In this document: piece after piece, positions 2,930 to 41,803 of the stretch
How positions within the stretch are numbered: the stretch's first letter is position 1
Layout: every line of letters begins with the position of its first letter
IMG/VR virus record: IMGVR_UViG_3300028364_000014
Coordinates: 124,001-188,000 of that record
Strand: one strand, 5' to 3'
Length of the DNA: 64,000 bases
The notes under the pieces: generated by a model
Told to the model about the DNA's origin: nothing
The model's database searches: none
Seen by the model: only the letters and a program-made list of their open reading frames with translations
Program-made: the position numbers and the translations under genes

Positions 2930-4816
2930 ATGTGTGGAATTCTTGGAGCACTTCGTTTCGGAGAACTTAATGATTCAACCAACGAAGAACATAATTGGAT
3001 GAGAAAAGCTAGTTTGCTAATTGCAGCTGATATTCTAGAAAAAACTGAAAAAAGAGGAAAAGATGCTACTGGAATATCGGCTCTTTTTAATGATGGAAGA
3101 TTTATTTTACAAAAAATGGGTACAGACGCTAAAACCTTTATGAGTCGCTTTGGTGGTAAAAAGGAAGATTTTCAAGGGTTTATGAAAATTCTTCGTGAAT
3201 ATGAGTCAACTCTAAAGATTATTACTGGACATTGCCGTAAAAAATCAGTAGGAGGTTCTTTTGACAATGTTAATAATCATCCAGTTAAAGCTAATAAAAT
3301 AGTTGGACTACATAATGGTACTCTAAAAAATCAAAACATCATTTTTGAAAATCTTAAATGTAAAAGAGACGGGGATGTAGACAGTGAAGCTATTTTTAGG
3401 CTTCTGGATTATTATACTAAAGGAGGAAAGGAACCTTTTACTATGGAAATGGTAGAAGATACTTTTAATAGGCTAGAAGGTACTTTTAGTATTATTGCTT
3501 ACAATATTGATAATCCTAATCAAGTAGTAGTTGGTCGTGACGGTAGACCAGCCGAATTTTGTCTTGTTAAACCACTAAAGACAGTATTTATTGCTTCAGA
3601 AAAAGCTTATATTGAACACGCTCTTTGGAGATATAATCAAACAGCAGCTTTATTTTATGATGGGCAGTATCCTAGAATTAAATCAGCAGACGCAGTGTTT
3701 AAAACACTAATAGATGATACTGCTGGTATTTTTGATCTTACAAAAGAAATTGATGAAAATTCTGAAATGGCGGATTTACTAGACACTAAAAAATTACCTC
3801 TAACAAGTCAAAGAATATGGAAAGTGCCTGTTAAATCGACTGTTTATCCTAATGATGCTTACAGAAATAGACAACAAACTGATGACAAAAAAAAAGTAAC
3901 AGTGGGTGGTCAGGGGGAACCCCTAAACACTGCAGCATCAGACAAAAGTATGACAGGAACTACCAAAACCAAGGATGCTGCGGAATCTAAAAGAAGATTT
4001 GTAGCAAGAGTATGGAATGAGGATTTAAATAAATTTATTCCAAAAACAGATATCAAAGCCATGGAAAGCACACAAGTAATTAATTTGGAAAAAAAAACCA
4101 TCAATGATTTAACATCAGTATTTAGAGAGGTTACAAAAGAACAAAATGATCCTTTTAATAAATCAGAACAAAACGCATTGGTGGAAAAGAAATTCACACA
4201 CGAGGTTGAAGAGTATAAAAGTGGAAAAACAGCTGTACTAAATAACATTATACCTATAGAGGCTAAAGCTTTAGAGGTCGAAGTAAACCAATTAAAAGTG
4301 ATTAAAGAAAAGACAGCTTCAGCACGTTTAGAAAGTAAAGATCATCTAGACGGGCTAAAGGCTACTATTCAAGCATCCAAAGAATTACTAAGATTGGACA
4401 CTATTGATGAAGTAGCTGAATTACTAAATGCGGATGTAGAAAATATTGAAAAACTATCATTACCTGCAATTACAAACAGACTCTTGAAAGCCCAATTTTC
4501 TAAAATGTTTCTTACTGGCTGGATGGCTAAATGTGATGCATTAAAAACACAAACAATCGATAAGCATATAGAAGCAATCGATAAACACGTGGAAGAAGAA
4601 AAAGAGGTGAAATCTAGAAAACATATCAGAGTATTAAAACATATTGTAAACGCGCTCGGCCAGTACGATGAAAAACAATTAGTTTCTGAATGGGCCAAAA
4701 AATGGGCTACTTCCTATTCTGAAATCAATACAGAGACTCTATCCGCGGTGTTTAATGAGGGAGACCTTCGTGATAATGACAAAGTTACTGAAATAATGAA
4801 ATACGTAAAAAAGTAA
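2930..4816 (+). CDS. Class II glutamine amidotransferase with long C-terminal extension
   Basis: MCGILG start, RGKDATG, GHCRKKS, NNHP, GLHNG, DSE and RDGRP motifs; about 330 extra C-terminal residues. Confidence 0.9.
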   Translation: MCGILGALRFGELNDSTNEEHNWMRKASLLIAADILEKTEKRGKDATGISALFNDGRFILQKMGTDAKTFMSRFGGKKEDFQGFMKILREYESTLKIITGHCRKKSVGGSFDNVNNHPVKANKIVGLHNGTLKNQNIIFENLKCKRDGDVDSEAIFRLLDYYTKGGKEPFTMEMVEDTFNRLEGTFSIIAYNIDNPNQVVVGRDGRPAEFCLVKPLKTVFIASEKAYIEHALWRYNQTAALFYDGQYPRIKSADAVFKTLIDDTAGIFDLTKEIDENSEMADLLDTKKLPLTSQRIWKVPVKSTVYPNDAYRNRQQTDDKKKVTVGGQGEPLNTAASDKSMTGTTKTKDAAESKRRFVARVWNEDLNKFIPKTDIKAMESTQVINLEKKTINDLTSVFREVTKEQNDPFNKSEQNALVEKKFTHEVEEYKSGKTAVLNNIIPIEAKALEVEVNQLKVIKEKTASARLESKDHLDGLKATIQASKELLRLDTIDEVAELLNADVENIEKLSLPAITNRLLKAQFSKMFLTGWMAKCDALKTQTIDKHIEAIDKHVEEEKEVKSRKHIRVLKHIVNALGQYDEKQLVSEWAKKWATSYSEINTETLSAVFNEGDLRDNDKVTEIMKYVKK

Positions 4817-6138: not shown

Positions 6139-7296
6139 ATGTTTAAAAAAATTTTAAATTATATTAAAAAAGGACTTGACATGAATAAAAAAGATGTTTA
6201 TATTACGTACAGTAGTGCCACAAATGTAACTGGAGAAAAATTACAAGCAGCTTTAAAAATTGCAGGTGGTTTAAAAATTCCTTCAAAAAAACAAAAACTA
6301 ATTATTGGGTGGGGAGCTAAAACAGACGAAGACGTAACTTTTCCAAAAGATACTATTGTATTAAACCATCCAAACGCCATCAGGACTAACCGCAATAAAC
6401 TTGGGGCTCTCGCACTTATGCTTGCTGGGGATGTATCAATAGCCCCATTTTCACCAACTGAAACAGTAGAAACTGATATTGCTAGTGGAAAAATTACACT
6501 ACCGCTTATTGGAAGAACAAAATATCATCAAGGTGGTAAAGGGTTTTGGGTATGCCCTACACTTACACATGTTAAGGACGCTATCAAAAACAATGCTGCT
6601 TATTTTCAGGCAATGATTGAGATTAAAGACGAATTCAGGTTTCATGTTTTTGGAGATACTGTAATTTATGCTGTAAAAAAAGTTCAACGAACTCCAGAAG
6701 ATTTTGAAGTAGCATTTATAGAAGATGAGCTTGCACGTCAGAAAAAATTGTGGGAAAAGAATAATGAGGGACCATTTCAAGAGAATTTTGCAAAAGAAAT
6801 ACTACGTAGACAAGCAAAAAATGCTACGGCTGGGGGTGCTAATATGATGGTACGCTCCAATAAAATGGGGTGGAGATTCTCTAGAATTAGTAAGCTAGAT
6901 AAAGCAGTTGAAGTTGAAGCTATAAAAGCTGTAAGAGCACTAGGTCTAGATTTTGGTGCCGTTGATTGTTGTACTGATGCTAATGGAGTTCCTTTTATTA
7001 TTGAAGTAAATACTGGACCTGGGCTTGAGGGCACACCATTTGATAATTATGTAAAAGCTTTTGAAGCTTTACTAGCAGATAAACCAAAAGCTATTCCTAC
7101 CAAACCTATATCTCCAGCTGCAAACATGGCTGCTGCAAAAACTAAAATTGGAAACTCTTCTATGGGTGCTGCTAAAAAAGCACTACTTCAGCAACAGCTC
7201 GGGAGACTTTCTAGTATTCTAGAAGAGACCCCTGATGATGAAATCGACACTTTGGAACGACTGGCAAAACACGTTATATTCGGTTCCGACTCATAA
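6139..7296 (+). CDS. ATP-grasp peptide ligase (RimK/YheCD-like)
   Basis: RTKYHQGGKG, EFRFHV and LGLDFGAVD...IIEVNTGPG ATP-grasp motifs. The true start may be the ATG at 6181. Confidence 0.85.
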   Translation: MFKKILNYIKKGLDMNKKDVYITYSSATNVTGEKLQAALKIAGGLKIPSKKQKLIIGWGAKTDEDVTFPKDTIVLNHPNAIRTNRNKLGALALMLAGDVSIAPFSPTETVETDIASGKITLPLIGRTKYHQGGKGFWVCPTLTHVKDAIKNNAAYFQAMIEIKDEFRFHVFGDTVIYAVKKVQRTPEDFEVAFIEDELARQKKLWEKNNEGPFQENFAKEILRRQAKNATAGGANMMVRSNKMGWRFSRISKLDKAVEVEAIKAVRALGLDFGAVDCCTDANGVPFIIEVNTGPGLEGTPFDNYVKAFEALLADKPKAIPTKPISPAANMAAAKTKIGNSSMGAAKKALLQQQLGRLSSILEETPDDEIDTLERLAKHVIFGSDS

Positions 7297-10467: not shown

Positions 10468-11859
10468 ATGAGAACATTAGAAGCTTTATGTAAACTTAAT
10501 GATACAAAGGCTGAGGTGTATCTTGTTGGGGGCTTCGTTAGAGATTTCATAAGAAGAAAGAAAAATAAAGACCTAGATATAGTAGTACGCTATATGGCAT
10601 TGTCTCAAATTTCTGACTTTTTAAGTACACACGGTAAAGTAAAAGAATTAATAATACATCGTAATCATGGACCAAAAGCTGACCCAATTAAATTTTTGTC
10701 TTTTTTCGGAAGTGATGGTGTAGAAGCTCAAATTACAACTGTGAAGGGTTCCGGTGAAGATCGAAACCCAAATGCGACGCTAAAACAAGACGGAAAACAT
10801 AGAGATTTTACAATAAATTCAATGTATCTTCCTGTTAATAATATAACATCAAAAGCAGTTATTGATCATTTTGGTGGAAAAAACGATATTGCTGCAAAAC
10901 AAGTCTTAACCGTAGGATCAGCAAAAGCAAAATTTGTAAAATCTCCAATTCGTATATTACGAGCATTTTCCATAGCCGCTCGAACAGGCTACAACATACA
11001 TGATCATGTTAAAGTAGCCATAAGTGCAAATGTACATCTATTAGCCGGAGTGCCTATGGAGGCTATTAGGGCTGAATTTGAGGACATACTTTTAAGTGCT
11101 AAACCATCAAAATATTTTAAAATGATGCAAAAACTTGGGGTATTAAAAATGATACTTCCAGAGCTAGAAGCTACTGTAGACTGCAAACAAGACAAAAGAT
11201 ACCATAAATACAACGTATTTGAACACTTGTTATACTCATGTGATAATATCGAGCCAGATTTAATTTTACGTTTAGCAGCAATTCTACATGATATTGGAAA
11301 GCCTGCTTCACGAAATAAAATTAATAATCACGTTACCTTCTATAAACATGAGGTTTATGGGGCTAGACTAGCTCGCGTTATACTTAAACGATTAAGGTAC
11401 GACAAGGTAACTATCAACAAAGTAACTCATTTAGTAAGAATGCATATGTACCACTATACCAGAGAATTTACTGATGCAGCTGTACGTAGATTCATTGTAA
11501 ATGCAGGTATTACTAAAGATAATATAGAAAATTTGGCGGATCTTCCATTATTTAAAGTAAGAGCAGCAGAACGGCTTGGAAATGGGTTTAAGAAAACCAA
11601 AAAAACCCAAAAGCAGTATGATTATGAGGATAGAATTAAATCAGTGTTTGAATCTAGTGCTGGATTCTCTATAAATGATTTAGCTATTGACGGTAATGAC
11701 CTAATGGACACTTTTAGTATGCCTCCTGGTAGAAATATCGGAGAACTTTTAAAGTATTTACTTAGTCTTGTAATGAGTACACCGGATATTAATAATAAAA
11801 AAGATCTTCTTAGGGCATCACTTGAATTTATTATAAATGAAAAAGAAAAACATGAATAA
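10468..11859 (+). CDS. cca: CCA tRNA nucleotidyltransferase with HD domain
   Basis: YLVGGFVRD, DLDIVV, RDFTINSM and IRILRAF motifs, plus H..HDIGK and HM HD-domain residues. Confidence 0.9.
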   Translation: MRTLEALCKLNDTKAEVYLVGGFVRDFIRRKKNKDLDIVVRYMALSQISDFLSTHGKVKELIIHRNHGPKADPIKFLSFFGSDGVEAQITTVKGSGEDRNPNATLKQDGKHRDFTINSMYLPVNNITSKAVIDHFGGKNDIAAKQVLTVGSAKAKFVKSPIRILRAFSIAARTGYNIHDHVKVAISANVHLLAGVPMEAIRAEFEDILLSAKPSKYFKMMQKLGVLKMILPELEATVDCKQDKRYHKYNVFEHLLYSCDNIEPDLILRLAAILHDIGKPASRNKINNHVTFYKHEVYGARLARVILKRLRYDKVTINKVTHLVRMHMYHYTREFTDAAVRRFIVNAGITKDNIENLADLPLFKVRAAERLGNGFKKTKKTQKQYDYEDRIKSVFESSAGFSINDLAIDGNDLMDTFSMPPGRNIGELLKYLLSLVMSTPDINNKKDLLRASLEFIINEKEKHE

Positions 11860-12698: not shown

Positions 12699-12766
12699 GT
12701 AAAGACTGACTTGTTTTGGGTTATCATACTGGATTAGTACTCCCTAAAACTATTACTTGTCTTTAC
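12699..12766 (+). ncRNA. Degenerate copy of the recurring CGAA/ACUU stem-loop motif
   Basis: gtaaagac/gtctttac stem with TTATC and ACTT elements; TGAC replaces CGAA. Confidence 0.45.
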
Positions 12767-15180: not shown

Positions 15181-15208
15181 TATCTTATTTTATTAATTTG
15201 TATACACT

Positions 15209-15292
15209 AGTGAAAAACCGAATACAATGGGTTATCAAAATCCGGTCTTAAGAACCAGATCTCTATCCACTGTAATACACTTGTTTTTCACT
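15209..15292 (+). ncRNA. Recurring CGAA/ACUU structured RNA motif
   Basis: agtgaaaaac-CGAA-tacaatgg-gTTATC...ccactgta-ATAC-ACTT-gtttttcact; 10-bp P1. Confidence 0.7.
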
Positions 15293-15325
15293 ATATATAT
15301 TTAATTTTTGTAAAATTTATTGCCG

Positions 15326-15402
15326 GGCTAATTAACTCAATAGGTAGAGTATAAGGTTTAAAAAAAATCTTAATGTTTCTGGTTCAAATCCAGAATTAGC
15401 CA
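15326..15402 (+). tRNA. tRNA-like gene/pseudo-tRNA with an 11-nt A-rich anticodon loop
   Basis: GGCTAAT/ATTAGCC acceptor, D-arm and GGTTCAAATCC T-arm are intact; loop reads TTTAAAAAAAA. Confidence 0.6.
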
Positions 15403-15443
15403 CAATATAATAATAAACTTATCTTTAATTATGGAATTAAATT

Positions 15444-16067
15444 ATGAGAATAGACGAAAAAGGGTTTTTAGTTTTTGACGTCGAAACTTCTGGACTTTAT
15501 AATAACGATTATCCAGCATATGACAAACAACAAGCTTGGATTGTTCAATTTGCTGGGCAAATTCTTGATAACAACTTAAAACTAGTAAGAGAAATTTCTT
15601 TATTACTTAAACCACCTTTTCCTGATGCAGTAATAGAAGAGAAAGCCGAAGAAACACACGGTATATCTCTGGCTGAGTGTTGGAAAGATGGAGTAAGTCC
15701 AGGAAAAGTACGATTATTTCTTAAACCGGTATTTGAAGGTAAATTAAGACTAGTAGGACATAACGTCAATTTTGATAGTAAGTTCTTACATAGATTTACT
15801 GCCAACAAAGCTGAAAGAGCGCAATTAATTGAAGCCTTCAAACAAGGTATTTGTACTATGCGTTCTGGTACTAGTATATGTAAATTACCACCAACTAAGG
15901 CAATGCTTAAGTATAAAAATCTTAAGTATAAAAATCCAAAACTAGAAGAGTTACATGAGTTCTTATTCAATGAGAAATTTGTTGGTGCCCATGATGCTCT
16001 CAATGATGTTAAAGCCACAGTACGTTGCCTACGTGAGATGATAAAAAGGGGTGCGATAAGGCTTTAG
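15444..16067 (+). CDS. DEDDh 3'-5' exonuclease (DnaQ-like)
   Basis: FDVETSG, GHNVNFD and HDALNDV. Confidence 0.9.
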   Translation: MRIDEKGFLVFDVETSGLYNNDYPAYDKQQAWIVQFAGQILDNNLKLVREISLLLKPPFPDAVIEEKAEETHGISLAECWKDGVSPGKVRLFLKPVFEGKLRLVGHNVNFDSKFLHRFTANKAERAQLIEAFKQGICTMRSGTSICKLPPTKAMLKYKNLKYKNPKLEELHEFLFNEKFVGAHDALNDVKATVRCLREMIKRGAIRL

Positions 16068-17718: not shown

Positions 17719-17790
17719 GAAATAATTAACTAACTTCCTTATAATAATGAGACGAGTTTATTAATTTTCTTGTATTATAAAAAATTAAAT

Positions 17791-17856
17791 GTAAAGACCG
17801 AATTTCTATGGCTTATCAATTGGTGAAAATACCATGGATGATAAACTTGTCTTTAC
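17791..17856 (+). ncRNA. Recurring CGAA/ACUU motif, copy 1 of a tandem pair
   Basis: gtaaagac-CGAA-tttctatgg-cTTATC...ccatggatg-ATAA-ACTT-gtctttac. Confidence 0.7.
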
Positions 17857-17861
17857 AAACG

Positions 17862-17924
17862 CAAGGACCGAAGCATCTGGTTCATCCTTTTAAGATAATA
17901 CACCAGAAGCACCACTTGTCCTTG
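17862..17924 (+). ncRNA. Recurring CGAA/ACUU motif, copy 2 of a tandem pair, abutting tRNA-Thr
   Basis: caaggac-CGAA-gcatctgg-TTCATC...ccagaagc-ACC-ACTT-gtccttg. Confidence 0.7.
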
Positions 17925-17928
17925 TTAT

Positions 17929-19531: not shown

Positions 19532-19661
19532 ATTTTTATTAGTATGGTCTTTAGTCCGTAAAACCCAATGTCTTTAGCTCGGGCTACCTCGATGAATCAG
19601 AAATCTTTAAGCGCGATCTTTTAGAATCCCAATCCTTTAGGTTTGGGAGTATGTCAAATTA

Positions 19662-19736
19662 GCAGAAGTAATTCAATTGGTAGAAAATTATCCACCAAGA
19701 TAATAAATGCAAGTTCAATCCTTGTCTTCTGCTCCA
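19662..19736 (+). tRNA. tRNA-Gly-like RNA with a 6-nt anticodon loop (CACCAA) and encoded CCA
   Basis: GCAGAAG/CTTCTGC acceptor, U73, CCA; TTATC-CACCAA-GATAA. Confidence 0.7.
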
Positions 19737-19866
19737 TTTATGCGGTAATCGTAAAAGGCGATCACTTATCTTCAACGGTTTGTATTGACGATATCTATAC
19801 ATATATTTCTGTTATGAATGATAGAGAAAGAAAAAAAGTGAAATTCTTTACTACTGCCCATAAAAT

Positions 19867-21506: not shown

Positions 21507-21628
21507 ATAGCTACTTACCAAGTAGCTCTATTAATCCTTGAGCACTGACGTTATGGTAGTCAGTTAGTAAAAAAAATCATACTCGAAAAGGTATGCACGT
21601 GTTTATATGGTTTGGAACACAAACATAT

Positions 21629-21762
21629 GAAGATTGTAGCTCAACTGGTTAGAGCGGCTGACCCAAAAATCTTTTTGCATCCACTTGTCACCCATCTATG
21701 ACCGAAGTAAAAAGTTTATCATACTTCAGCGAGTTGAGGGTTCAAATCCCTCCAATCTTCCA
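21629..21762 (+). ncRNA. tRNA scaffold with a 64-nt structured insert in the anticodon loop
   Basis: AAGATTG/CAATCTT acceptor, canonical D and T arms, and a GCTGA/TCAGC stem enclosing 21662-21725; G-1:C73. Confidence 0.75.
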
Positions 21763-22341
21763 AGTAAACCCTCTAATTTTCTAAGTAAAAAAAAATTAAA
21801 AACATTAAAGGTTCAAAACTTTTAGGCACTAAAGGAGATATTTTATGCTTTCATTTAAAGAACTAAAACAGTTGAAAATAAAAACTGATTTTTTAAATAG
21901 ACAAGTGAAGAAATTTTTTCTTTCTTTAAGTGGCAGTTGTGAATATAGAAAATTAAAACATCACGATAGTGGGGATTGGTACAAATGTACACATAAAAAT
22001 TATCACTTAGCAAAATATAGAGACATAACTCCTTGTGATGAAAAAGAATGTCCTAAATTAAATTAAAGATAATAATGCAGTCAGAACTCTACTTTTCAAC
22101 ATAGATCCCAAACTGTATATTAATAGGTATGGATTAGCAGATGATTCATATCAAAATCAAGTATCATGGTCGACTTATTTTTAATGAGTTGAAATTAAAA
22201 TTTGATGAACAACTTTATGGAGCACACCCGTATAGCTCAGCCAGGTGGGGGCCATCCAATCACAACGGGTAGTCAAAGGATAACTGGAATGGTTATCTAT
22301 AAGTAAACCCTAGCCAGTACTAAACTACTCAGTGTTGGCAC

Positions 22342-23897: not shown

Positions 23898-24455
23898 ATG
23901 ACTGATTTTTTTACGTCCGATTGGCATATGTTTCATTATAATATTATTAAATATGCCAATAGACCATTTAAAGATGAAAATACAATGAAAAATGAAATCA
24001 TTAAGAGACATAATGAAGTAGTAAGACCAGAAGACACTACATATGTTCTTGGTGATGTAGCAATGATTGGTAGACACGGACTGAGTAAATTAGAACCTAT
24101 ACTTAAAAAAATGAATGGTACTTTTCATCTTATTCTTGGTAATCACGATGAGGGTAAGCCATTTACTTATGAAAGGATGGGGTTTACTACAGTACATACA
24201 GCACTTCAATATGATACTAATACAATCCTAAGACATGACCCAGCGTCTGCTATTATTATGCCTGATAAGTTGTGGCTTGTAGGGCATGTGCATAATCTAT
24301 TTAAAATTTCTCTTAAACATACTATATGCTATAACGTAGGGGTCGATGTTAATAATTTCTATCCTGTAACTCTTGCACATATACATAAAGAAATTATTGA
24401 AGCTAAAAAAGATAGGGAATTATTTAATCGATTTAGAGAAAAAGGAGGCAGTTAA
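23898..24455 (+). CDS. Calcineurin-like metallophosphoesterase
   Basis: SDWH, LGD, GNHD and GHVH motifs. Confidence 0.9.
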   Translation: MTDFFTSDWHMFHYNIIKYANRPFKDENTMKNEIIKRHNEVVRPEDTTYVLGDVAMIGRHGLSKLEPILKKMNGTFHLILGNHDEGKPFTYERMGFTTVHTALQYDTNTILRHDPASAIIMPDKLWLVGHVHNLFKISLKHTICYNVGVDVNNFYPVTLAHIHKEIIEAKKDRELFNRFREKGGS

Positions 24456-27878: not shown

Positions 27879-27968
27879 GTTGGGAGTGGCGAAATTGGCT
27901 AGACGCGCTAGGTTGTGGTCCTAGTATCCGTAAAGGATGTGAGGGTTCGAATCCCTTCTCTCACCCCA
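27879..27968 (+). tRNA. tRNA-His(GTG) with a long variable arm
   Basis: CTAGG-TTGTGGT-CCTAG; G-1:C73 and CCA; ATCC-GTAAA-GGAT variable arm; Leu-type D-arm. Confidence 0.85.
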
Positions 27969-29143: not shown

Positions 29144-29247
29144 GTAAGAACCGAAGCAAATAGTTCATCAAACTAAAAAGATAATGATGTAGTAAATCAT
29201 TACGTAACAAAAAACAACTTAAACTATTGGCACTCACTTGTTCTTAC
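29144..29247 (+). ncRNA. Recurring CGAA/ACUU motif
   Basis: gtaagaac-CGAA-gcaaatagtt-CATC...aactattggc-ACTC-ACTT-gttcttac. Confidence 0.7.
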
Positions 29248-29292
29248 AAAAGTATTCTAAAAATTCTTAATGAATTAATACAGGAGCCTCGT

Positions 29293-30231
29293 ATGACAGT
29301 GCAAAAATTTAATAATAGTGAAGTGGTATTAAACACTGATGTGTATTCATTACATTTTTTTAATCATGGAGAAGGTACTCCCGTATTTATAATCCCACCA
29401 CACGCAGGAAGACATGGAAACATCGCTCAAAAAATGATTGATATGTGTGTTAATCAAGACAAAACTGTCTTTGCTTTTGAACTTAAATCAGCAACTCAGG
29501 CTACAAAAAATACATCAATAAGTAATCTCATTGAAGCACTGACTGAGTGTCAAAACTTTATAGGTAAAAAAGTAGATATAATTGGGCTATGCCAAGGTGG
29601 ATGGGTTTCTGCTATCTATACTGCTTTATATCAGGAGCGAATTGAAAGATTTGCAGCTTTTGCAACCCCAATTAATACTAAGACCGGAAAGAAAAATGCA
29701 ATAGAAGATTATGTATCAAGTAATTCTTTTATTATAGCGTATCATAAAAAAATTGTAGAAATGCACAACGGTATCCAGCCAGGATATATGCAATGGTTGG
29801 CTTTCTCAATGGTTAGACCTGAGTACGTTTATATGGAACGATGGATGCGTTTACAGCAACTAATGTTGTCTTGTGATTATAATGGGCTTAAAAAATGGAA
29901 GAAAAATAATGACTGGTATGATGAACCACAAGACTTAGCAGGGGTTTGGTTTCTACAAGCTTTTAAGAATTTATTTTATAATAATGATCTTTATGAAGGA
30001 AGATGGAAAGTATGTAATAAAATAGTAAATCTTAATAATATAACTTGTCCTTGTTTTTTATATGCAGGAGAAGATGATGATATTACTCACCCACAACAAA
30101 TGTTTGATATGAAAAATAAAATAGGGACAACAAATGTTAAATGTACTTGTTTTCCGGGAGCTGGACATACTAAAGTATTTGTAGGTGCCAGTGAGCTTAA
30201 ACAATTTAAGAAGGATTTCTTTGGTGAGTAA
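29293..30231 (+). CDS. PHA synthase/depolymerase-like alpha/beta hydrolase (Cys nucleophile)
   Basis: PPHAG, GLCQGG nucleophile elbow, EDDDIT acid and GAGH His. Start corrected to the ATG after AGGAG. Confidence 0.75.
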   Translation: MTVQKFNNSEVVLNTDVYSLHFFNHGEGTPVFIIPPHAGRHGNIAQKMIDMCVNQDKTVFAFELKSATQATKNTSISNLIEALTECQNFIGKKVDIIGLCQGGWVSAIYTALYQERIERFAAFATPINTKTGKKNAIEDYVSSNSFIIAYHKKIVEMHNGIQPGYMQWLAFSMVRPEYVYMERWMRLQQLMLSCDYNGLKKWKKNNDWYDEPQDLAGVWFLQAFKNLFYNNDLYEGRWKVCNKIVNLNNITCPCFLYAGEDDDITHPQQMFDMKNKIGTTNVKCTCFPGAGHTKVFVGASELKQFKKDFFGE

Positions 30232-31058: not shown

Positions 31059-31148
31059 TCCAGAGTACTCTAATGGAAAGAGGCTTGCCTGTTAAGCAAG
31101 TGTAGTCCTTAATTTGGTATGGTGGTTCGAATCCACCCTCTGGAGCCA
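31059..31148 (+). tRNA. tRNA-Asn(GTT) with a long (20-nt) variable region
   Basis: TCCAGAG/CTCTGGA acceptor, G73 and CCA; CTTGC-CTGTTAA-GCAAG. Confidence 0.85.
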
Positions 31149-31158
31149 AAAAACATAA

Positions 31159-31233
31159 GCGGAAGTAATTCAATTGGTAGAAGCCTATCCTCCAAGATAG
31201 TTAATGCAAGTTCAATCCTTGCCTTCCGCTCCA
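31159..31233 (+). tRNA. tRNA-Gly-like RNA with a 6-nt anticodon loop (CTCCAA) and encoded CCA
   Basis: GCGGAAG/CTTCCGC acceptor, U73, CCA; paralog of 19662-19736. Confidence 0.75.
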
Positions 31234-31244
31234 TTAATTAATAA

Positions 31245-31403: not shown

Positions 31404-32624
31404 ATGAAACTATTGAAACTATATAGTCAATTCTATATAAAAAAATTTATTAATCTTTTAAATACTGAAGCCATCCCTCTTGAAATTGTGGATTTATCTG
31501 GTAAGGTATATAAAACCGCGTCAAATAGCATTAGCCATAGGTTAATTATAAAAGATCCTAGATTTTTTAAATCTTTACATTCCCCTAATGCTTTATCTTT
31601 AGGTGAAGCCTACATTAAAGAATACTTTGACATTGAAGGGGATGTTAGAACGCTATATACCATGCTTCATGATAGAATATTGAATACTGAGCAAAAGAAA
31701 AATAAACTAACCTCTTTCATAAAATCTTTTGTGGATGTAAGACAAAAGGAAAAAGAAAATATTGAGTATCACTATGACGCTCCTAGTACTTTTTATAGAA
31801 TTTTTTTAGGGCGAACAATGGGCTATACGTGTGGTTATTATCCTGATCAAACCACCACAATGAGTGAAGCACAAGAAAGAAAAATGGATATCATCTGTAA
31901 AAAATTAAAATTGAAAAAAGGTGAGCATCTTCTAGATGTTGGGTGTGGTTGGGGTAATTTTGCAATTTATGCTGCTGAACACTATGGAGTTACTGTCACA
32001 GGTATTACTTTAAGTGAAGAACAAAAAATATATGCAGACAAATTAGTAGAGGCAAGTCAACTCAGTGTTTCAATTAAAATTATGAACTACCGTGACCTTC
32101 CGTTAAATTATTATGATAAAATATCATGTATTGGGATGTCAGAGCATGTAGGTCAAAAACATATGCAGGAATTTTTTAATACTATATATAAAACACTTAA
32201 ACAAGGCGGATTATTTCTACATCATAGTATCACAACTAATACTAAAAGACAAAAAGGATTAGAAAATTCTTTTTTAAATAAATACATGTACCCTGGAGGG
32301 GAGTTAATGTTTGAGCACGATCTTGTTAAGTGTGCTGAAATAGCTAACTTTGAGTTACTAAATGCTGAGAACTTTAGACCTCATTATGTTACAACGTTGA
32401 ATGATTGGATAGATCGAATAGAGGATAGAAAGTCTGATATATTGAATGTTATTTCCGAACAAGTGTATAGAATATACCATACTTTTTTTATAGGGTCAGC
32501 AGCCTCATTCAAATTAAAAGAAATATCCTTATTTCAAAATCTTTTTTATAAGACTAGTGTATATGACACTGACAATTATTTTAATAGTATCTGTGACTAC
32601 TCCCCCTCTAAGCCGAAGCTATAG
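31404..32624 (+). CDS. cfa: Cyclopropane-fatty-acyl-phospholipid synthase (C-terminus replaced by IS end)
   Basis: IEYHYD, MGYTCGYY, LLDVGCGWG, GITLSEEQ, GMSEHVG, KYMYPGG and HYVTTL..W. Confidence 0.9.
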   Translation: MKLLKLYSQFYIKKFINLLNTEAIPLEIVDLSGKVYKTASNSISHRLIIKDPRFFKSLHSPNALSLGEAYIKEYFDIEGDVRTLYTMLHDRILNTEQKKNKLTSFIKSFVDVRQKEKENIEYHYDAPSTFYRIFLGRTMGYTCGYYPDQTTTMSEAQERKMDIICKKLKLKKGEHLLDVGCGWGNFAIYAAEHYGVTVTGITLSEEQKIYADKLVEASQLSVSIKIMNYRDLPLNYYDKISCIGMSEHVGQKHMQEFFNTIYKTLKQGGLFLHHSITTNTKRQKGLENSFLNKYMYPGGELMFEHDLVKCAEIANFELLNAENFRPHYVTTLNDWIDRIEDRKSDILNVISEQVYRIYHTFFIGSAASFKLKEISLFQNLFYKTSVYDTDNYFNSICDYSPSKPKL

Positions 32625-33874
32625 AGGAGGCTTCTTGGGGGATTAACCCCTGAGACTGTAGCCCCAGTCTCAAAATATTTATGGCAGCATTATGGTCTCT
32701 ATTTAGTACTAAATTGCAGTGAGGACACCTGTGAATTCTGGTTGAAAGGGTCTTTTTTACGACCCGCCCGCAAGCTGGATTTGAGCACATTTGGGATGTA
32801 TATGCTGGATTTACTGGTATTAATTGTTTGCCTAAAATTGATGCTTTATATTGTAGAAAAAGTATGAACTTATTCCAGCTTGCGTCAGCGATAGATTTAT
32901 TTAAACCAGATTTTACCGACGCACCATTAGGTAAATATCCATCAGAATTAGGATCTTTTATTGGAGTAGCTCGCTTAACCATATTCTTTACGTCAAGTTT
33001 TTCATAAACTATAACATTGGAGATAGACAAGAGCTTGTTGGCTGTTTTATGGAGAAAATCATTACGTTGGCACTTTATTCTGTAATGACATTTCCTAATT
33101 GCTTTTAACAGCCTGTAGTATTTCTTTGTTCTTTTAGTAGTTTTTGATAACTTTCTTTGTAGATTAGCGAGACTTTTTTCATTAGCTCTAAAACTTTTTG
33201 GTGATTTTACAGAATTTCCATCTGAATCATAATAGAAATCATTTAAACCTAAATCTATTCCTAAAAAGGTAGTTGGATTCTGCTTAATCTCTACTTTAAG
33301 ATGATTCTCAAAGGAGAAGCAGACAAACCATTTACCAGCTTCTTTGGATATAGTTAAGGTTTTAATTGTTCCATTTTCTGGAATTTCTCTGTGGTATTTA
33401 ATCTTAATATTACCTATTTTGGAGATTTTTAGTATACCATCGACAGGACGTTCTTTAAACTGTGGGTAAGTAATGCTGCTCCAGTCTTTAAACTTTTTAA
33501 ACTTTGGAAAACCCGCCTTAGCTTCCCCAGATTTAATTCTTCTGAAGAAAGATTTATAGGCTGTGTCTAAACGTTTTAGTGTATTTTGAAGCACCTGTGA
33601 ATGTACTGAACCAAACCACGGACGTTCTTTCTTTAGAAAAGTAAGTTCATTGCTTTGTTCAAAAAGACTGATTGAAATACTGTGGTTTTCATAAAGCCAG
33701 ATTCTGTCCTCAAGAGCCCAGTTATACAAATACCTACACATGGAGAACTGATTCTCCAGGCGTGTGGTTTGAGCTTTAGTAGGATAAATTCTGTATTTAT
33801 GTGTAAGTAGCATTTCTCTCCATAAGTAAAATAATTAGTTTCTAATACATAATATATCACAGCATGTGATGTAT
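32593..33874 (-). mobile_element. IS200/IS605-family tnpB-only element (IS1341-like)
   Basis: The - strand right end has a subterminal hairpin ending in TCAC at 32593; left end adjoins TTGAC; rejoining the flanks restores an in-frame cfa C-terminus. No tnpA is present in the window. Confidence 0.8.
32608..33813 (-). CDS. tnpB: RNA-guided endonuclease TnpB
   Basis: HKYRIYPT HTH, GIDLG (RuvC-I), VYEKL (RuvC-II), TSQMCS..C zinc finger and RDHNAAINI (RuvC-III). Confidence 0.95.
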   Translation of the reverse strand: MLLTHKYRIYPTKAQTTRLENQFSMCRYLYNWALEDRIWLYENHSISISLFEQSNELTFLKKERPWFGSVHSQVLQNTLKRLDTAYKSFFRRIKSGEAKAGFPKFKKFKDWSSITYPQFKERPVDGILKISKIGNIKIKYHREIPENGTIKTLTISKEAGKWFVCFSFENHLKVEIKQNPTTFLGIDLGLNDFYYDSDGNSVKSPKSFRANEKSLANLQRKLSKTTKRTKKYYRLLKAIRKCHYRIKCQRNDFLHKTANKLLSISNVIVYEKLDVKNMVKRATPIKDPNSDGYLPNGASVKSGLNKSIADASWNKFILFLQYKASILGKQLIPVNPAYTSQMCSNPACGRVVKKTLSTRIHRCPHCNLVLNRDHNAAINILRLGLQSQGLIPQEASSIASA

Positions 33875-39910: not shown

Positions 39911-41803
39911 TTATACATTACTAGTTTCTTCAAAGTCTGCATCAACTACGTCATCTTCCTGAGTTGTGTCCTCTTGGTCTGGCGTTGATCCTTCCTGCGA
40001 GGCTTGTTGATACATAGCTTCGGCAAGTTTGTGGGATGCTTGGGACAAAGCTTCACTCTTCTCCTTAATTGCAGCCACATCTGTACCGTCCTTGACCTTT
40101 TTCAAGTCTTCACAAGCTTCTTCAATTAAAATCTTAGTAGCATCTTCAAGTTTATCAGTATTTTCTTTCATATTCTTTTCTGTTTGATGAATAAGAGACT
40201 CCGCAGAATTCTTTGCTTCTACAAGTTCACATTTCTTTTTATCTTCGTCCGCGTGGAGTTCAGCGTCATTAATCATATTTTTAATTTCTTCGTCAGTAAG
40301 TCCGCTTGCAGCGGTGATACTAATAGATTGCTCTTTATCAGTAGCAATATCTTTAGCCGCAACATTTACTATTCCATTTACATCTATATTAAAAGTTACT
40401 TCTATTTGGGGAACCCCTCTTGGTGCCGCAGGGATATCAGATAGTTCAAATTGGCCAAGGGTTTTATTACCTGACGCCACATCACGCTCTCCTTGGAGTA
40501 CATGTATTGTTACTGCAGGTTGATCATCCGCCGCTGTAGAAAATACTTGGCTTTTCTTAATAGGGATAGTGGAGTTTTTTTCAATAAGTTTAGTCATAAT
40601 CCCGCCAAGAGTCTCAATCCCAAGACTTAAAGGTGTAACATCCAAAAGAAGCACATCATTTACATCTCCTTGAAGAACCCCTGCTTGAATTGCTGCCCCC
40701 ATAGCCACCACTTCATCGGGGTTAACACCCTTATGAGGTTTTTTTCCAAATATTTTTTCTACTCGTGCTTGAACTGCGGGCATACGAGTCATCCCACCCA
40801 CAAGTACCACCTCATTGATATTACCTATAGGAATTTTTGCATCTTTAAGTGCAGTATTACATGGTCCTTCTAAATTATCAAGAAGATCCGCCACAAGGGA
40901 TTCTAGTTTTGCTCTAGTAAGTTTTACATCAAGGTGCTTAGGTCCATTTGCATCGGCAGTGATGAATGGTAGATTGATATCTGTCTCAACAACTGAAGAT
41001 AGTTCCATTTTAGCCTTTTCTGCGGCTTCTTTTAGGCGCTGAAGAGCCATCTTATCAGTTCTGATATCTATGCCCTGACTTTTTTTAAACTCATCAGCAA
41101 CGTAGTCTATAATTCTGAGGTCAAAATCCTCACCACCGAGATGCGTATCACCATTAGTAGATTTTACTTCAAACACCCCGTCTCCAATTTCCAGTATGGA
41201 CACATCAAACGTGCCTCCACCAAGATCGAACACAGCAATCTTCTCTTCCCCTTTTTTGTCAAGACCATAGGCTAAAGAAGCGGCAGTGGGTTCATTAATA
41301 ATACGTTTTACATCCAGCCCTGCAATCCTTCCTGCATCTTTTGTAGCTTGTCGTTGGCTATCATTAAAATAAGCTGGTACAGTAATAACAGCTTCTTTAA
41401 CTTCTTCACCGAGATAATCTTCCGCCATTTTTTTAATATCCGCTAATATAAATGACGAGATTTCAGCTGGACTGTGTTGTTTTCCTCTGAGATTGATCCT
41501 AGTATCGCCGTTAGATGCCTCTTCAATTAAAAATGGGAGCACTTTTTTATCTTTTTGAATCTGAGGAGAGTTAAACTTCCTACCAACTAAACGTTTTACA
41601 CCGAATACAGTATTTTCAGGATTTGTAATGGCTTGACGCCTTGCTGTTTGTCCTACTAATCTATCACCACTCTCAGTTAGAGCTACTACGGATGAAGTTG
41701 TTCTATTCCCCTCTGAATTTGTAATTACTTTAGGTTCTCCTGCTTCCATAACAGCTACACACGAGTTCGTTGTTCCAAGATCAATTCCAATTATTTTAGT
41801 CAT
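39911..41803 (-). CDS. dnaK: Chaperone DnaK (Hsp70)
   Basis: [42 protein letters not shown] and QGER..; full length. Confidence 0.98.

What the first reader, a model, noticed from the sequence alone, without database searches (positions are those of the whole stretch)
21629..21762. tRNA whose anticodon loop is replaced by a circularly permuted copy of the new motif
Seen: canonical acceptor, D and T arms with G-1:C73 (a His identity pair). The 64-nt loop contains ctttttgc-ATCC-ACTT-gtca[loop]tgac-CGAA-gtaaaaag-TTTATC, the same motif permuted so that the tRNA body is its variable domain. No clean excision gives a canonical 7-nt loop. Inference: a mini-intron/self-processing tRNA, or an aminoacylatable carrier RNA. 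The permutation independently supports the motif's fold.
Basis: partly seen in the sequence, partly recalled or inferred. Interest (0 to 1): 0.85.

Follow-up and report, generated by a model that had tools for sequence, protein, structure and literature searches.

The report
A tRNA-shaped Ro60-binding Y RNA
This phage gene is a complete tRNA body whose anticodon loop is replaced by the bulged stem that Ro60 proteins bind in Y RNAs; it is neither an intron-containing nor a self-cleaving tRNA, and belongs to a widespread form of bacterial and phage Y RNA that I could not find described.

Summary
Window 21630-21759 is a near-perfect tRNA body (Rfam tRNA 50.7 bits) with a 64-nt anticodon loop, and no excision restores U33.

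The "new motif" is the Ro60/Rsr-binding module of Y RNAs: P1, a bulged C, G·U and A-U pairs, P2, then GUUAUC. Its five linear copies in the window find only nematode stem-bulge (Y RNA-type) models in Rfam, at sub-threshold scores.

The same tRNA-with-Y-module design recurs in at least 81 RNAs from phage contigs and bacterial genomes, especially cyanobacteria. Most sit beside TROVE+vWA Ro60 genes. The stems covary (92.7% of cells paired, against 41-49% in slid controls).

A covariance model built without the window sequence scores it at 69.6 bits, against 42.1 or less for ordinary tRNAs. The source phage encodes a Ro60 orthologue 46 kb upstream on the same contig.

Best reading: a YrlA-type Y RNA in native tRNA topology, with an open acceptor end and a capped Ro60 stem. 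Published YrlA has the reverse arrangement. It would tether Ro60 to tRNA-recognising factors.

G-1:C73 occurs in 45 of 81 members, so aminoacylation is open. Intron and ribozyme readings are not supported. I rate it a new variant of a known kind.

The parts
21629..21629 (+). G at position -1, able to pair with C73 (21760)
   Evidence: Direct reading. G-1:C73 is present in 45 of 81 family members.
21630..21661 (+). 5' half of the tRNA body: acceptor 5' strand 21630-21636, U8 A9, D arm 21639-21655, G26, anticodon-stem 5' strand 21657-21661
   Evidence: Rfam tRNA alignment, family model R1 alignment, MFE fold.
21662..21670 (+). 5' strand of the internal loop between the anticodon stem and P2 (CCCAAAAAU). 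It corresponds to the CUAAAAC linker that follows the D arm in relatives.
   Evidence: Alignments A1 and A3 and the R1 alignment.
21671..21678 (+). P2 strand CUUUUUGC, which pairs with 21707-21714
   Evidence: P2 covaries across the family.
21679..21706 (+). Ro60-binding module. Junction AUCCAC (21679-21684). U21685 and U21686 pair with A21705 and G21704. P1 is GUCA (21687-21690) with UGAC (21699-21702). Capping loop CCCAUCUA (21691-21698). Bulged C21703. Unpaired A21706.
   Evidence: Matches the bulged helix described for Y RNAs (GGUCCGA; GNCGAAN0-1G) in Chen et al. 2014. The helix is 92% paired across 81 relatives. Linear copies hit Rfam RF01656 stem-bulge RNA.
21707..21714 (+). P2 strand GUAAAAAG
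21715..21725 (+). UUUAUC (the conserved YUAY/GUUAUC element of YrlA) plus AUACU; 3' strand of the internal loop
   Evidence: TTATC is invariant in alignments A1 and A3. The conserved YUAY is described.
21726..21760 (+). 3' half of the tRNA body: anticodon-stem 3' strand 21726-21730, variable loop 21731-21735, T arm 21736-21752, acceptor 3' strand 21753-21759, C73 at 21760. It is followed by CAA, so CCA is not encoded.
12699..12766 (+). Linear hairpin Y-like RNA, copy E (bulged U variant; its P1 is the same as in copy C)
   Evidence: Structure-aware scan with P1 of 8 bp and P2 7 of 8; sequence.
15208..15293 (+). Linear hairpin Y-like RNA, copy D, 33 nt upstream of a tRNA (15326)
17790..17857 (+). 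Linear hairpin Y-like RNA, copy C
   Evidence: Rfam RF01656 at 16.3 bits, E = 0.38, full length.
17861..17925 (+). Linear hairpin Y-like RNA, copy A, ending 3 nt before tRNA-Thr (17929)
   Evidence: Rfam RF01656 at 23.2 bits, E = 0.006, full length.
29144..29247 (+). Linear hairpin Y-like RNA, copy B, with an extra hairpin in its loop. It lies in the leader of an alpha/beta-hydrolase ORF.
10468..11859 (+). CCA-adding enzyme / poly(A) polymerase-family ORF in the same tRNA island. It is a candidate to complete the 3' end of the tRNA-form RNA.
   Evidence: Pfam PolyA_pol, PolyA_pol_RNAbd, tRNA_NucTran2_2 and HD. The functional link is inferred.
23898..24455 (+). Metallophosphoesterase ORF. Its homologues lie next to Ro60 genes in other phages.
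   Evidence: Pfam Metallophos. Homologues are at L192:3380-4006 and L147:7423-8058, beside TROVE ORFs. A Metallophos ORF (homology to this one not tested) also lies 0.9 kb downstream of this phage's own Ro60 gene.

Best explanation
Window 21630-21759 encodes a Y RNA of the bacterial YrlA kind, built in the native tRNA topology. The 5' and 3' ends form an open acceptor stem. The D and T arms make a normal tRNA elbow. The anticodon arm is extended by P2 and by the Ro60-binding bulged helix, which a loop caps.

Inferred life cycle:
1. It is transcribed with the neighbouring tRNAs.
2. RNase P cuts the 5' end, probably leaving G-1.
3. The 3' end is trimmed and completed by a CCA-adding enzyme.
4. 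The capped helix is bound by the phage's own Ro60 orthologue, which is encoded 46 kb upstream on the same contig.
5. The tRNA-shaped half then serves as the effector module. It would bring Ro60 to proteins that recognise tRNAs (processing, repair or decay enzymes, possibly a synthetase), or recruit such proteins to RNAs held in the Ro60 ring.
6. The five hairpin Y-like RNAs in the same tRNA island would be alternative Ro60 partners or gates, like YrlB and Yrn2.

Shown here: the architecture, membership of the family, covariation, the genomic association with Ro60 genes, and a Ro60 gene in this phage.

Inferred, not shown: transcription, processing, Ro60 binding, and the identity of the effector.
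For: (1) tRNA body. Rfam tRNA scores 50.7 bits, with the insertion only in the anticodon loop.

(2) Nature of the insert. Its conserved nucleotides are those of the Ro60 site.
- Chen et al. 2014 (PMC4201824) describe GNCGAAN0-1G / GGUCCGA and a conserved YUAY.
- The linear copies' only notable Rfam matches are the nematode stem-bulge RNA family RF01656 (the Y RNA link is from memory). The matches run full length at 23.2 and 16.3 bits, below the gathering score of 38.

(3) Family.
- A pattern scan of viral contigs returned both canonical YrlA and tRNA-form RNAs.
- ARAGORN with introns found 27 unique tRNA-form RNAs in 20 phage loci. Fifteen of them share a locus with a TROVE ORF, mostly less than 600 nt away.
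- Pfam confirms TROVE + vWA_Ro60 for the neighbouring ORFs.
- Control: 0 of 118 chance-pattern loci carry TROVE, against 49 of 127.

(4) Independent, protein-selected sample. Of 80 phage Ro60 loci, 13 carry 18 tRNA-form RNAs, all on the Ro60 strand.

(5) Bacteria. There are 39 candidates in 120 loci, often in tandem arrays. Many are cyanobacterial. Seventeen of the 21 loci also carry TROVE.

(6) Membership test. Model R1 was built from 25 relatives, with the window and its duplicate L178 excluded. It scores the window RNA at 69.6 bits (E = 1e-15) over all 122 positions. The best ordinary tRNA scores 42.1 bits, with the module deleted.

(7) Structure.
- 92.7% of cells are paired, against 41-49% when partners are slid. 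The covariation score is 0.618 against about 0.12.
- P2 pairs with its own partner strand at 7 or more of 8 positions in 82% of RNAs. With other RNAs' partner strands the figure is 21.5%.

(8) This phage has the protein partner. L497:685-2307, on the same contig IMGVR_UViG_3300028364_000014, is TROVE (7e-37) + vWA_Ro60 (1e-50). It lies at contig 97.7-99.3 kb; the RNA lies at 145.6 kb.

(9) Precedent for distance. A 296-kb phage contig has a canonical YrlA in its tRNA array about 130 kb from its Ro60 gene.

(10) Orthologue. The related phage L227 has a tRNA-form RNA in the syntenic place, with different stem sequences.
Against: - There are no expression, processing or binding data of any kind.
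- The Ro60 gene is 46 kb away. Typical YrlA lies within 4 kb of Ro60.
- P1 is only 4 bp, plus the G·U and A-U pairs.
- The 'GNCGAA' motif reads ACCGAA here, with A in place of the first G.
- The window RNA scores lower with R1 (69.6 bits) than most relatives (75-117 bits). Unlike its closest relative, it keeps a 5-bp anticodon stem.
- The inner three pairs of P2 are only 58% paired family-wide.
- Alignment A4 was fitted to the model's structure, which inflates the pairing counts.
- The effector of the tRNA-like module is unknown even for canonical YrlA.
Confidence: 0.75

Rival explanations
1. It is an intron-containing tRNA. The 57-nt insert is removed by self-splicing or by a protein endonuclease and ligase, giving a functional tRNA, for example Leu(CAA) as ARAGORN calls it.
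For: ARAGORN with introns reports tRNA-Leu(caa) with a 57-nt intron. The body is an excellent tRNA. The phage carries RNA-end-processing genes.
Against: - Every contiguous excision leaves C33, and the forced loop reads CCCAAAA (direct reading).
- No group I or group II intron family matches, and 57 nt is far below the size of group I introns (known size range, from memory).
- ARAGORN's 'anticodons' for relatives scatter over Arg, Leu, Ile, Pro, Gly, Cys, Val and Pyl.
- Most relatives have no anticodon stem at all.
- Conservation lies in the insert (CCGAA, UUAUC, CUUG), not at any splice junction.
Confidence: 0.04
2. The motif is a small self-cleaving ribozyme, circularly permutable like hammerhead or twister. 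It cuts the tRNA or its neighbours out of the polycistronic transcript.
For: The motif occurs in linear and permuted forms, and right next to tRNA 5' ends; copy A ends 3 nt before tRNA-Thr. Ribozymes are known beside phage tRNAs (from memory: theta/HDV-like ribozymes).
Against: - No ribozyme family matches at the gathering or E-value threshold.
- The conserved core is not that of a hammerhead (no CUGANGA...GAAA) or of the other small ribozymes. It is a rod of two helices with an internal loop and has no multi-helix junction.
- It co-occurs with Ro60 genes, which a general processing ribozyme would not need.
Confidence: 0.02
3. It is a tRNA-derived decoy or degenerating tRNA gene that works without Ro60. 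For example, it could soak up host tRNA-targeting nucleases or modification enzymes, and the insert would be a repeated element that landed in the anticodon loop.
For: The phage has an 18-gene tRNA island and RNA-repair-type enzymes, a setting linked to conflicts over tRNA cleavage (PMC7824862). Ro60 is not adjacent in this genome.
Against: - The same design is conserved, with compensatory changes, in at least 81 RNAs from unrelated phages and bacteria. That is not what a decaying gene looks like.
- The design is tightly linked to Ro60 genes elsewhere, and this phage encodes Ro60.
- A decoy for anticodon nucleases would be expected to keep an anticodon loop.
Confidence: 0.08

Closest known systems
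YrlA (Y RNA-like A) of Salmonella, Mycobacterium smegmatis and mycobacteriophages (Chen et al. 2014, PMC4201824; Wang et al. 2018, bioRxiv 10.1101/312249)
   Same: - A Ro60/Rsr-binding bulged stem with the CGAA motif.
- The conserved YUAY (GUUAUC) element.
- A tRNA-like domain with D arm, T arm, acceptor-type stem and a Levitt pair.
- The linker after the D arm (CUAAAAC) is also shared with canonical phage YrlA.
- Genes lie next to Ro60 and among tRNAs.
   Different: - The topology is the reverse. In published YrlA the RNA ends are in the Ro60 stem and the acceptor stem is closed by a loop. [quoted passage not shown]
- Here the acceptor stem is open and the Ro60 stem is capped.
- The window copy also keeps a 5-bp anticodon stem and a class I variable loop.
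Processed M. smegmatis YrlA (cut by RNase P, CCA added; Chen et al. 2014)
   Same: It ends up with an open 7-bp acceptor stem carrying CCA on a tRNA-like domain attached to a Ro60-binding stem.
   Different: That RNA becomes two pieces held together by base pairing. Here the same end state is encoded as one continuous RNA.
Deinococcus radiodurans Yrn1
   Same: A Y RNA with tRNA-like features and with its T and D arms in a different orientation from YrlA.
   Different: In Yrn1 the Ro60 stem takes the place of the acceptor stem and an anticodon-like arm is kept. Here the Ro60 stem takes the place of the anticodon loop.
Metazoan Y RNAs and nematode stem-bulge RNAs (Rfam RF00019, RF01656)
   Same: The five linear copies share the design: a lower stem, a bulged C, GA/UU pairs, an upper stem, GUUAUC and a small loop. 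RF01656 is their only notable Rfam match.
   Different: The scores are below the gathering threshold. The source is a phage. The tRNA-form copy has no counterpart in animals.
Aminoacylatable tRNA mimics: tmRNA and plant-virus tRNA-like structures
   Same: An L-shaped tRNA-like domain with a free acceptor end, attached to a non-tRNA functional module.
   Different: No evidence of charging here. The added module binds Ro60 and is neither an mRNA-like segment nor a viral 3' UTR.
Intron-containing and circularly permuted tRNA genes (cyanobacterial group I introns; algal and archaeal permuted tRNAs)
   Same: An insertion at the anticodon loop, or a permutation relative to another form.
   Different: No intron family matches, no bulge-helix-bulge motif was noticed on reading, and no mature anticodon loop can be recovered.

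Membership tests
YrlA-type bacterial/phage Y RNA | Ro60/Rsr-binding motif (GNCGAAN0-1G; a bulged helix like GGUCCGA / UUGACC) | tested here: met
   UGAC-C-GA-AG (21699-21707) lies opposite UU-GUCA (21685-21690). The first G of the motif is A here and is G in most relatives.
YrlA-type bacterial/phage Y RNA | tRNA-like domain (D arm, T arm, acceptor-type stem, Levitt pair) and the conserved YUAY | tested here: met
   Rfam tRNA 50.7 bits. A15:U48 and UUUAUC are present on direct reading.
YrlA-type bacterial/phage Y RNA | Encoded within about 4 kb of the Ro60 gene, on the same strand | tested here: not met
   No TROVE ORF in the 64-kb window. The Ro60 gene is 46 kb upstream on the same strand of the same contig. 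The criterion is met for most relatives.
YrlA-type bacterial/phage Y RNA | Topology: RNA termini in the Ro60-binding stem, acceptor-like stem closed by a loop | tested here: not met
   The reverse holds: an open acceptor stem, with P1 capped by CCCAUCUA.
YrlA-type bacterial/phage Y RNA | Bound by Ro60/Rsr in vivo | not testable with these tools
   Needs RIP or EMSA.
tRNA-form (tRNA-topology) Y RNA family defined here | A full-length match to a covariance model built from other members, including the module | tested here: met
   R1 scores 69.6 bits, E = 1e-15, over positions 1-122. Ordinary tRNAs score 42.1 bits or less, with the module deleted.
Canonical tRNA | A 7-nt anticodon loop with U33 and a purine at 37 | tested here: not met
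   The loop is 64 nt and no excision gives U33.
Group I / group II intron-containing tRNA | A recognisable intron core within the insert | tested here: not met
   No intron family at E <= 1 in 21550-21850. The insert is 57 nt.
Small self-cleaving ribozymes (hammerhead, twister, pistol, hatchet, HDV-like) | A match to the family covariance model or catalytic core | tested here: not met
   No such Rfam match at the gathering or E-value threshold over the copies.
Metazoan Y RNA / nematode sbRNA (Rfam) | A score at or above the family gathering threshold | tested here: not met
   RF01656 scores 23.2 and 16.3 bits against a threshold of 38 for linear copies A and C. The alignments are full length with matching conserved positions. 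Resemblance only.
tRNA-His-type acceptor end | G-1 paired with C73, followed directly by CCA | tested here: inconclusive
   G-1 and C73 are present, but are followed by CAA. Family-wide, G-1:C73 occurs in 45 of 81. C73 is followed by CCA in 7 and by NCCA in 6.

The most novel reading that the evidence does not exclude
tRNA-form Y RNAs are matured like tRNAs (RNase P, CCA addition) and are aminoacylated, perhaps by HisRS through G-1:C73. Ro60 would then be coupled to the charging state of the cell, or delivered to EF-Tu, the ribosome or a synthetase. In phages, this complex would be a countermeasure in conflicts over tRNA cleavage and repair. The class would also be the long-missing Y RNA partner of Ro60 in cyanobacteria.
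Probability: 0.2. Interest if true: 0.85.

Novelty: new variant of a known kind. Interest (0 to 1): 0.62.

Why it matters
The role of the tRNA-like domain of bacterial Y RNAs has been open since 2014. The published forms have a closed acceptor stem and no CCA end, which argued against aminoacylation.

A widespread natural form has an open acceptor end. CCA is encoded in part of the family, and G-1:C73 occurs in more than half. This makes the question directly testable.

It would also explain why few YrlA RNAs were found in cyanobacteria. The original survey discarded candidates that overlapped tandem tRNA genes.

It also affects annotation. Intron-tolerant tRNA finders call these RNAs intron-containing tRNAs with arbitrary anticodons, which would inflate phage and cyanobacterial tRNA counts.

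For phage biology, it places a Ro60/Y RNA system inside a tRNA and RNA-repair island of a 238-kb phage: one protein, five hairpin RNAs and one tRNA-form RNA.

Tried and rejected
- **Ribozyme and RNA-motif readings.** I compared the conserved nucleotides by eye with hammerhead, hairpin-ribozyme, twister and pistol cores, and with the K-turn, loop E and tetraloop-receptor motifs. None fits, and Rfam gives no support.
- **Promoter reading** of TTCATC...GATAAT. The spacing is wrong (7 nt) and the flanking stems covary. The promoter/terminator scan was uninformative.
- **First collection pattern** (CACTTG..ACCGAA..TYATC). It returned almost only chance matches, with 1 true hit. I reused those loci as a negative control.
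- **A motif regex requiring ATCC...CGAA...TTTATC.** It found only the query itself.
- **blastn of the region and of relatives against GenBank phages.** There were no informative matches.
- **Seven cultured-phage Ro60 loci** (Phosso, Sixama, FuzzBuster, Moab, StarPlatinum, Big4, BearBQ). No tRNA-form RNA was found. Sixama has canonical YrlA-like RNAs between its tRNAs.
- **Looking for Ro60 in the window.** It is absent by Pfam on 30 ORFs, by tblastn and by HMM.
- **The search for related loci for Ro60.** It did not list the source contig among its best 80. A codon-biased TDNETW pattern then found it.
- **MAFFT alignments.** They misaligned P2. I used an anchor-based parse and a covariance-model realignment instead.
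- **Literature.** No paper in the held library describes an open-acceptor, capped-stem Y RNA. The 2020 Annual Review on bacterial Ro60 (PMC10870794) is not held, so prior description cannot be fully excluded.
Full report
**Observation**

Rfam's tRNA model matches 21630-21760 end to end at 50.7 bits, with a single 63-nt insertion inside the anticodon loop.

The elements are:
- acceptor 21630-21636 / 21753-21759
- D arm 21639-21655
- a 5-bp anticodon stem 21657-21661 / 21726-21730
- a 5-nt variable loop 21731-21735
- T arm 21736-21752
- G-1 at 21629 and C73 at 21760, followed by CAA

All the usual tertiary nucleotides are present on direct reading: U8, A14, A15:U48, G18G19, U54U55C56 and A58.

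Default ARAGORN does not call it. With introns allowed, it forces 'tRNA-Leu(caa), 57-nt intron'.

The 64-nt loop begins CCCAAAA and ends UCAUACU. Each of the eight possible contiguous 57-nt deletions therefore leaves C at position 33.

The MFE fold (-34.2 kcal/mol, z = -3.26) keeps the cloverleaf arms and adds two helices in the insert.

**The motif and its copies**

A repeat search led to linear copies of the motif. A structure-aware scan then found five on the + strand: 12699-12766, 15208-15293, 17790-17857, 17861-17925 and 29144-29247. Each has P1 of at least 8 bp and P2 with 7 of 8 pairs.

Their common plan is: P1a - C(bulge) - GA - (A) - P2a (8 nt) - [G/U]U[U/C]AUC - variable loop - P2b - A(N)NC A - CUU - P1b. 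P1 and P2 have different sequences in each copy.

In the tRNA copy the same parts appear in the same relative order, permuted. P1 (GUCA/UGAC) is closed by a loop, and the 'variable loop' position is occupied by the whole tRNA body. The permutation is real.

**What the motif is**

The plan recalled the Ro60-binding stem of Y RNAs. That was a lead from memory, so I tested it in four ways.

1. *Rfam.* A scan of 17785-17928 at the E-value threshold gives only one notable family for both copies there: RF01656, nematode stem-bulge RNA (Y RNA homologues; from memory). The alignments run full length, and the conserved positions coincide: GGUCCG.A.G-stem-GUUAUC ... stem-CACCAACUUGACC. Scores are 23.2 bits (E = 0.006) and 16.3 bits (E = 0.38), below the gathering score of 38.

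2. *Literature.* Chen et al. 2014 (PMC4201824) define bacterial YrlA RNAs by three features:
   - a GNCGAAN0-1G motif resembling the GGUCCGA contacted by Ro60
   - a conserved YUAY
   - a tRNA-like domain

   - About 64 matches have the published YrlA topology, with an acceptor-like hairpin right after the T arm. Eighteen unique RNAs have the window's topology.
   - The most common large ORF in these loci is a protein of about 540 aa that Pfam identifies as TROVE + vWA_Ro60.
   - ARAGORN with introns found 27 unique tRNA-form RNAs in 20 loci. Fifteen of them share a locus with a TROVE ORF, mostly less than 600 nt away.
   - As a control, none of 118 loci (1.03 Mb) fetched by a chance-dominated pattern carries TROVE. 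By contrast, 49 of 127 loci do.

4. *A sample chosen by protein, not RNA.* 477 viral contigs encode Ro60 relatives. Among the best 80 loci (±3 kb), 13 carry 18 tRNA-form RNAs, all on the Ro60 strand and mostly just upstream. Twenty-three carry canonical YrlA by a strict pattern.

**Bacteria have it too**

The same pattern in one-genome-per-species bacterial contigs gave 39 tRNA-form candidates in 120 loci.
- They are often in tandem arrays directly upstream of Ro60. In L330, four copies at 3998-4531 precede a 544-aa ORF.
- Some have an encoded CCA.
- Seventeen of the 21 loci that carry them hold a TROVE ORF.
- Many are cyanobacteria, including cultured Nostoc, Dendronalium and Iningainema strains.

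[quoted passage not shown] That procedure would have removed this class.

**Formal membership and structure**

I built covariance model R1 from 25 phage tRNA-form RNAs, excluding the window and its identical copy L178.
- With filters off, R1 scores window 21630-21759 at 69.6 bits (E = 1e-15) over all 122 model positions, with the Y module aligned.
- The next hits are the window's ordinary tRNAs, at 42.1 bits or less, with the 48 module positions deleted.
- The window holds only one tRNA-form RNA.

Over 50 sources, R1 finds 81 such RNAs of at least 110 nt. On that alignment:

| Measure | Observed | Slid controls |
|---|---|---|
| Cells forming standard pairs | 92.7% | 41-49% |
| Covariation score | 0.618 | about 0.12 |

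Per helix, the same alignment gives:

| Helix | Cells paired |
|---|---|
| Ro60 helix (U-A, U·G, bulge, then P1) | 92% |
| Outer P2 | 89.8% |
| Inner three pairs of P2 | 58% |

The low value for inner P2 is consistent with the mismatch or bulge seen there in most copies.

Because this alignment is fitted to the model, I also ran an alignment-free test. P2a pairs with its own P2b at 7 or more of 8 positions in 82% of 34 parsed RNAs. With other RNAs' P2b, under the same offset optimisation, the figure is 21.5%. There are 34 distinct P2 sequences.

RNAalifold on a plain MAFFT alignment independently recovers the acceptor, D, T and P1 helices, with compensatory changes in 16 of its 20 predicted pairs.

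**The protein partner in this phage**

The window itself has no TROVE ORF. I checked by Pfam on 30 ORFs, by tblastn and by an HMM over six-frame ORFs.

The window equals positions 124,001-188,000 of contig IMGVR_UViG_3300028364_000014 (237,910 bp). This is inferred from locus L178, which is identical over the RNA and whose three ORFs compared translate identically.

A codon-biased scan for the Ro60 motif TDNETW found locus L497 on that same contig.
- ORF L497:685-2307 is TROVE (7e-37) + vWA_Ro60 (1e-50). Precomputed Pfam on other assemblies agrees.
- It lies at contig 97.7-99.3 kb, on the same strand, 46 kb upstream of the RNA.
- Another phage contig of 296 kb likewise has a canonical YrlA in its tRNA array about 130 kb from its Ro60 gene. 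Distance alone is therefore not an objection.

A related phage (L227, proteins 55-79% identical) has a tRNA-form RNA in the syntenic position with different acceptor, P1 and P2 sequences.

**How it most likely works**

*Established for canonical systems (literature):*
- Ro60/Rsr binds the bulged stem of Y RNA.
- The other module of the Y RNA tethers an effector, which is PNPase in Deinococcus and Salmonella.
- YrlA's tRNA-like module is modified by TruB and DusA.
- M. smegmatis YrlA is cut by RNase P and receives CCA.
- Its binding partner is unknown.

*Inference for the window RNA:*
- It is transcribed with the tRNA array and matured at both ends like a tRNA. The island encodes a CCA-adding enzyme at 10468-11859 and an RNase T-like exonuclease at 15444-16067.
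- The phage Ro60 binds it at 21685-21705.
- Its tRNA half recruits tRNA-recognising proteins.
- The five hairpin RNAs would be YrlB/Yrn2-like alternative partners.
- Copy A ends 3 nt before tRNA-Thr, so RNase P cleavage of that tRNA would define the hairpin's 3' end.
- A metallophosphoesterase (23898-24455) has homologues beside Ro60 in two other phages. A Metallophos ORF also follows this phage's own Ro60 gene. This hints at an RNA-end-healing context, as proposed for jumbo phages (PMC7824862).

**The acceptor end**

G-1:C73 occurs in 45 of 81 members, 24 of 42 from phages and 21 of 39 from bacteria. C73 is followed directly by CCA in 7 members, which is His-like. It is followed by NCCA in 6, which means an 8-bp acceptor stem plus a discriminator. 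In the window it is followed by CAA.

**Rivals**

- *Intron-containing tRNA.* No usable loop can be recovered, no intron family matches, the called anticodons are arbitrary, and most relatives lack an anticodon stem.
- *Self-cleaving ribozyme.* No family or core matches, the shape is a rod with no junction, and linkage to Ro60 would be unexplained.
- *Ro60-independent decoy or decaying gene.* This is contradicted by conservation with covariation and by the Ro60 linkage.

**Novelty**

YrlA and its tRNA mimicry are known. [quoted passage not shown]

The form found here is the complementary topology, encoded as one RNA. I found no description of it in the held literature.

The nearest statement is a speculation that some annotated tRNAs next to a Ro60-like gene of phage Bas63 'are possibly Y RNAs' (PMC11482910).

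The 2020 review of bacterial Ro60 is not held, so prior description cannot be excluded. I therefore rate it a new variant of a known kind.

Noticed in passing
L497:656-687 (contig IMGVR_UViG_3300028364_000014, outside the window): The Ro60 gene's ribosome-binding site sits inside a closed Ro60-binding-like hairpin: ACUU-GUUCU-[UAAAAGG]-AGAAC-C-GA-AA-AUG. Similar hairpins lie within 25 nt of a candidate start codon in 6 of 69 phage Ro60 loci, against about 1% background per 66 nt. This suggests autoregulation of Ro60 translation.
   Followed up: partly
window 12699-12766, 15208-15293, 17790-17857, 17861-17925, 29144-29247: Five hairpin Y RNA-like genes (YrlB/stem-bulge type) are scattered through the tRNA island. 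Two are in tandem right before tRNA-Thr. One lies in the leader of an alpha/beta-hydrolase ORF (29227-30231).
   Followed up: yes
window 23898-24455; L192:3380-4006; L147:7423-8058; L497:3184-3933: A metallophosphoesterase family recurs next to phage Ro60 genes and lies 2 kb downstream of the tRNA-form RNA here. It may be an RNA-end-healing partner.
   Followed up: partly
window 15326-15403: A tRNA called Phe(aaa), with Rfam tRNA at 59.4 bits, has an oversized A-rich anticodon loop (UUUAAAAAAAA between the stem strands). ARAGORN needs a 2-nt 'intron' to fit it.
   Followed up: no
window 27880-27968 and 31059-31148: tRNA-His(gtg) of 89 nt and tRNA-Asn(gtt) of 90 nt both carry a long extra arm, which is unusual for these class I tRNAs. 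The His gene scores only 38.3 bits in Rfam.
   Followed up: no
window 19658-19741 and 31155-31238: Two 87%-identical tRNA-like paralogues. ARAGORN calls one 'tRNA-??? (cc)' and misses the other. Rfam tRNA scores them at 43.3 and 48.4 bits.
   Followed up: no
window 43339-46491 (-): A ClpB-like AAA+ ATPase is interrupted by an intein (Hint plus LAGLIDADG domains), next to a full-length Hsp70/DnaK at 39911-41803.
   Followed up: no
window 32608-33813 (-): A TnpB / IS605 OrfB-type ORF (OrfB_IS605, Cas12f1-like TNB domain, HTH) lies inside the tRNA island on the opposite strand.
   Followed up: no
L240 (Gordonia phage Sixama, MN484601.1), about 6660-7200 of the locus: Canonical YrlA-like RNAs lie unannotated in the gaps between annotated tRNA genes downstream of the Ro-like protein gene.
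   Followed up: partly
L330:3998-4531, L358:4644-5096, L437:107-583, L433:4729-5074 (cyanobacterial genomes): Tandem arrays of 2-4 tRNA-form Y RNAs lie directly upstream of Ro60, several with an encoded CCA. Some units in the L330, L373 and L420 arrays have the module in yet another arrangement, with CCGAA before the CUUG strand.
   Followed up: partly
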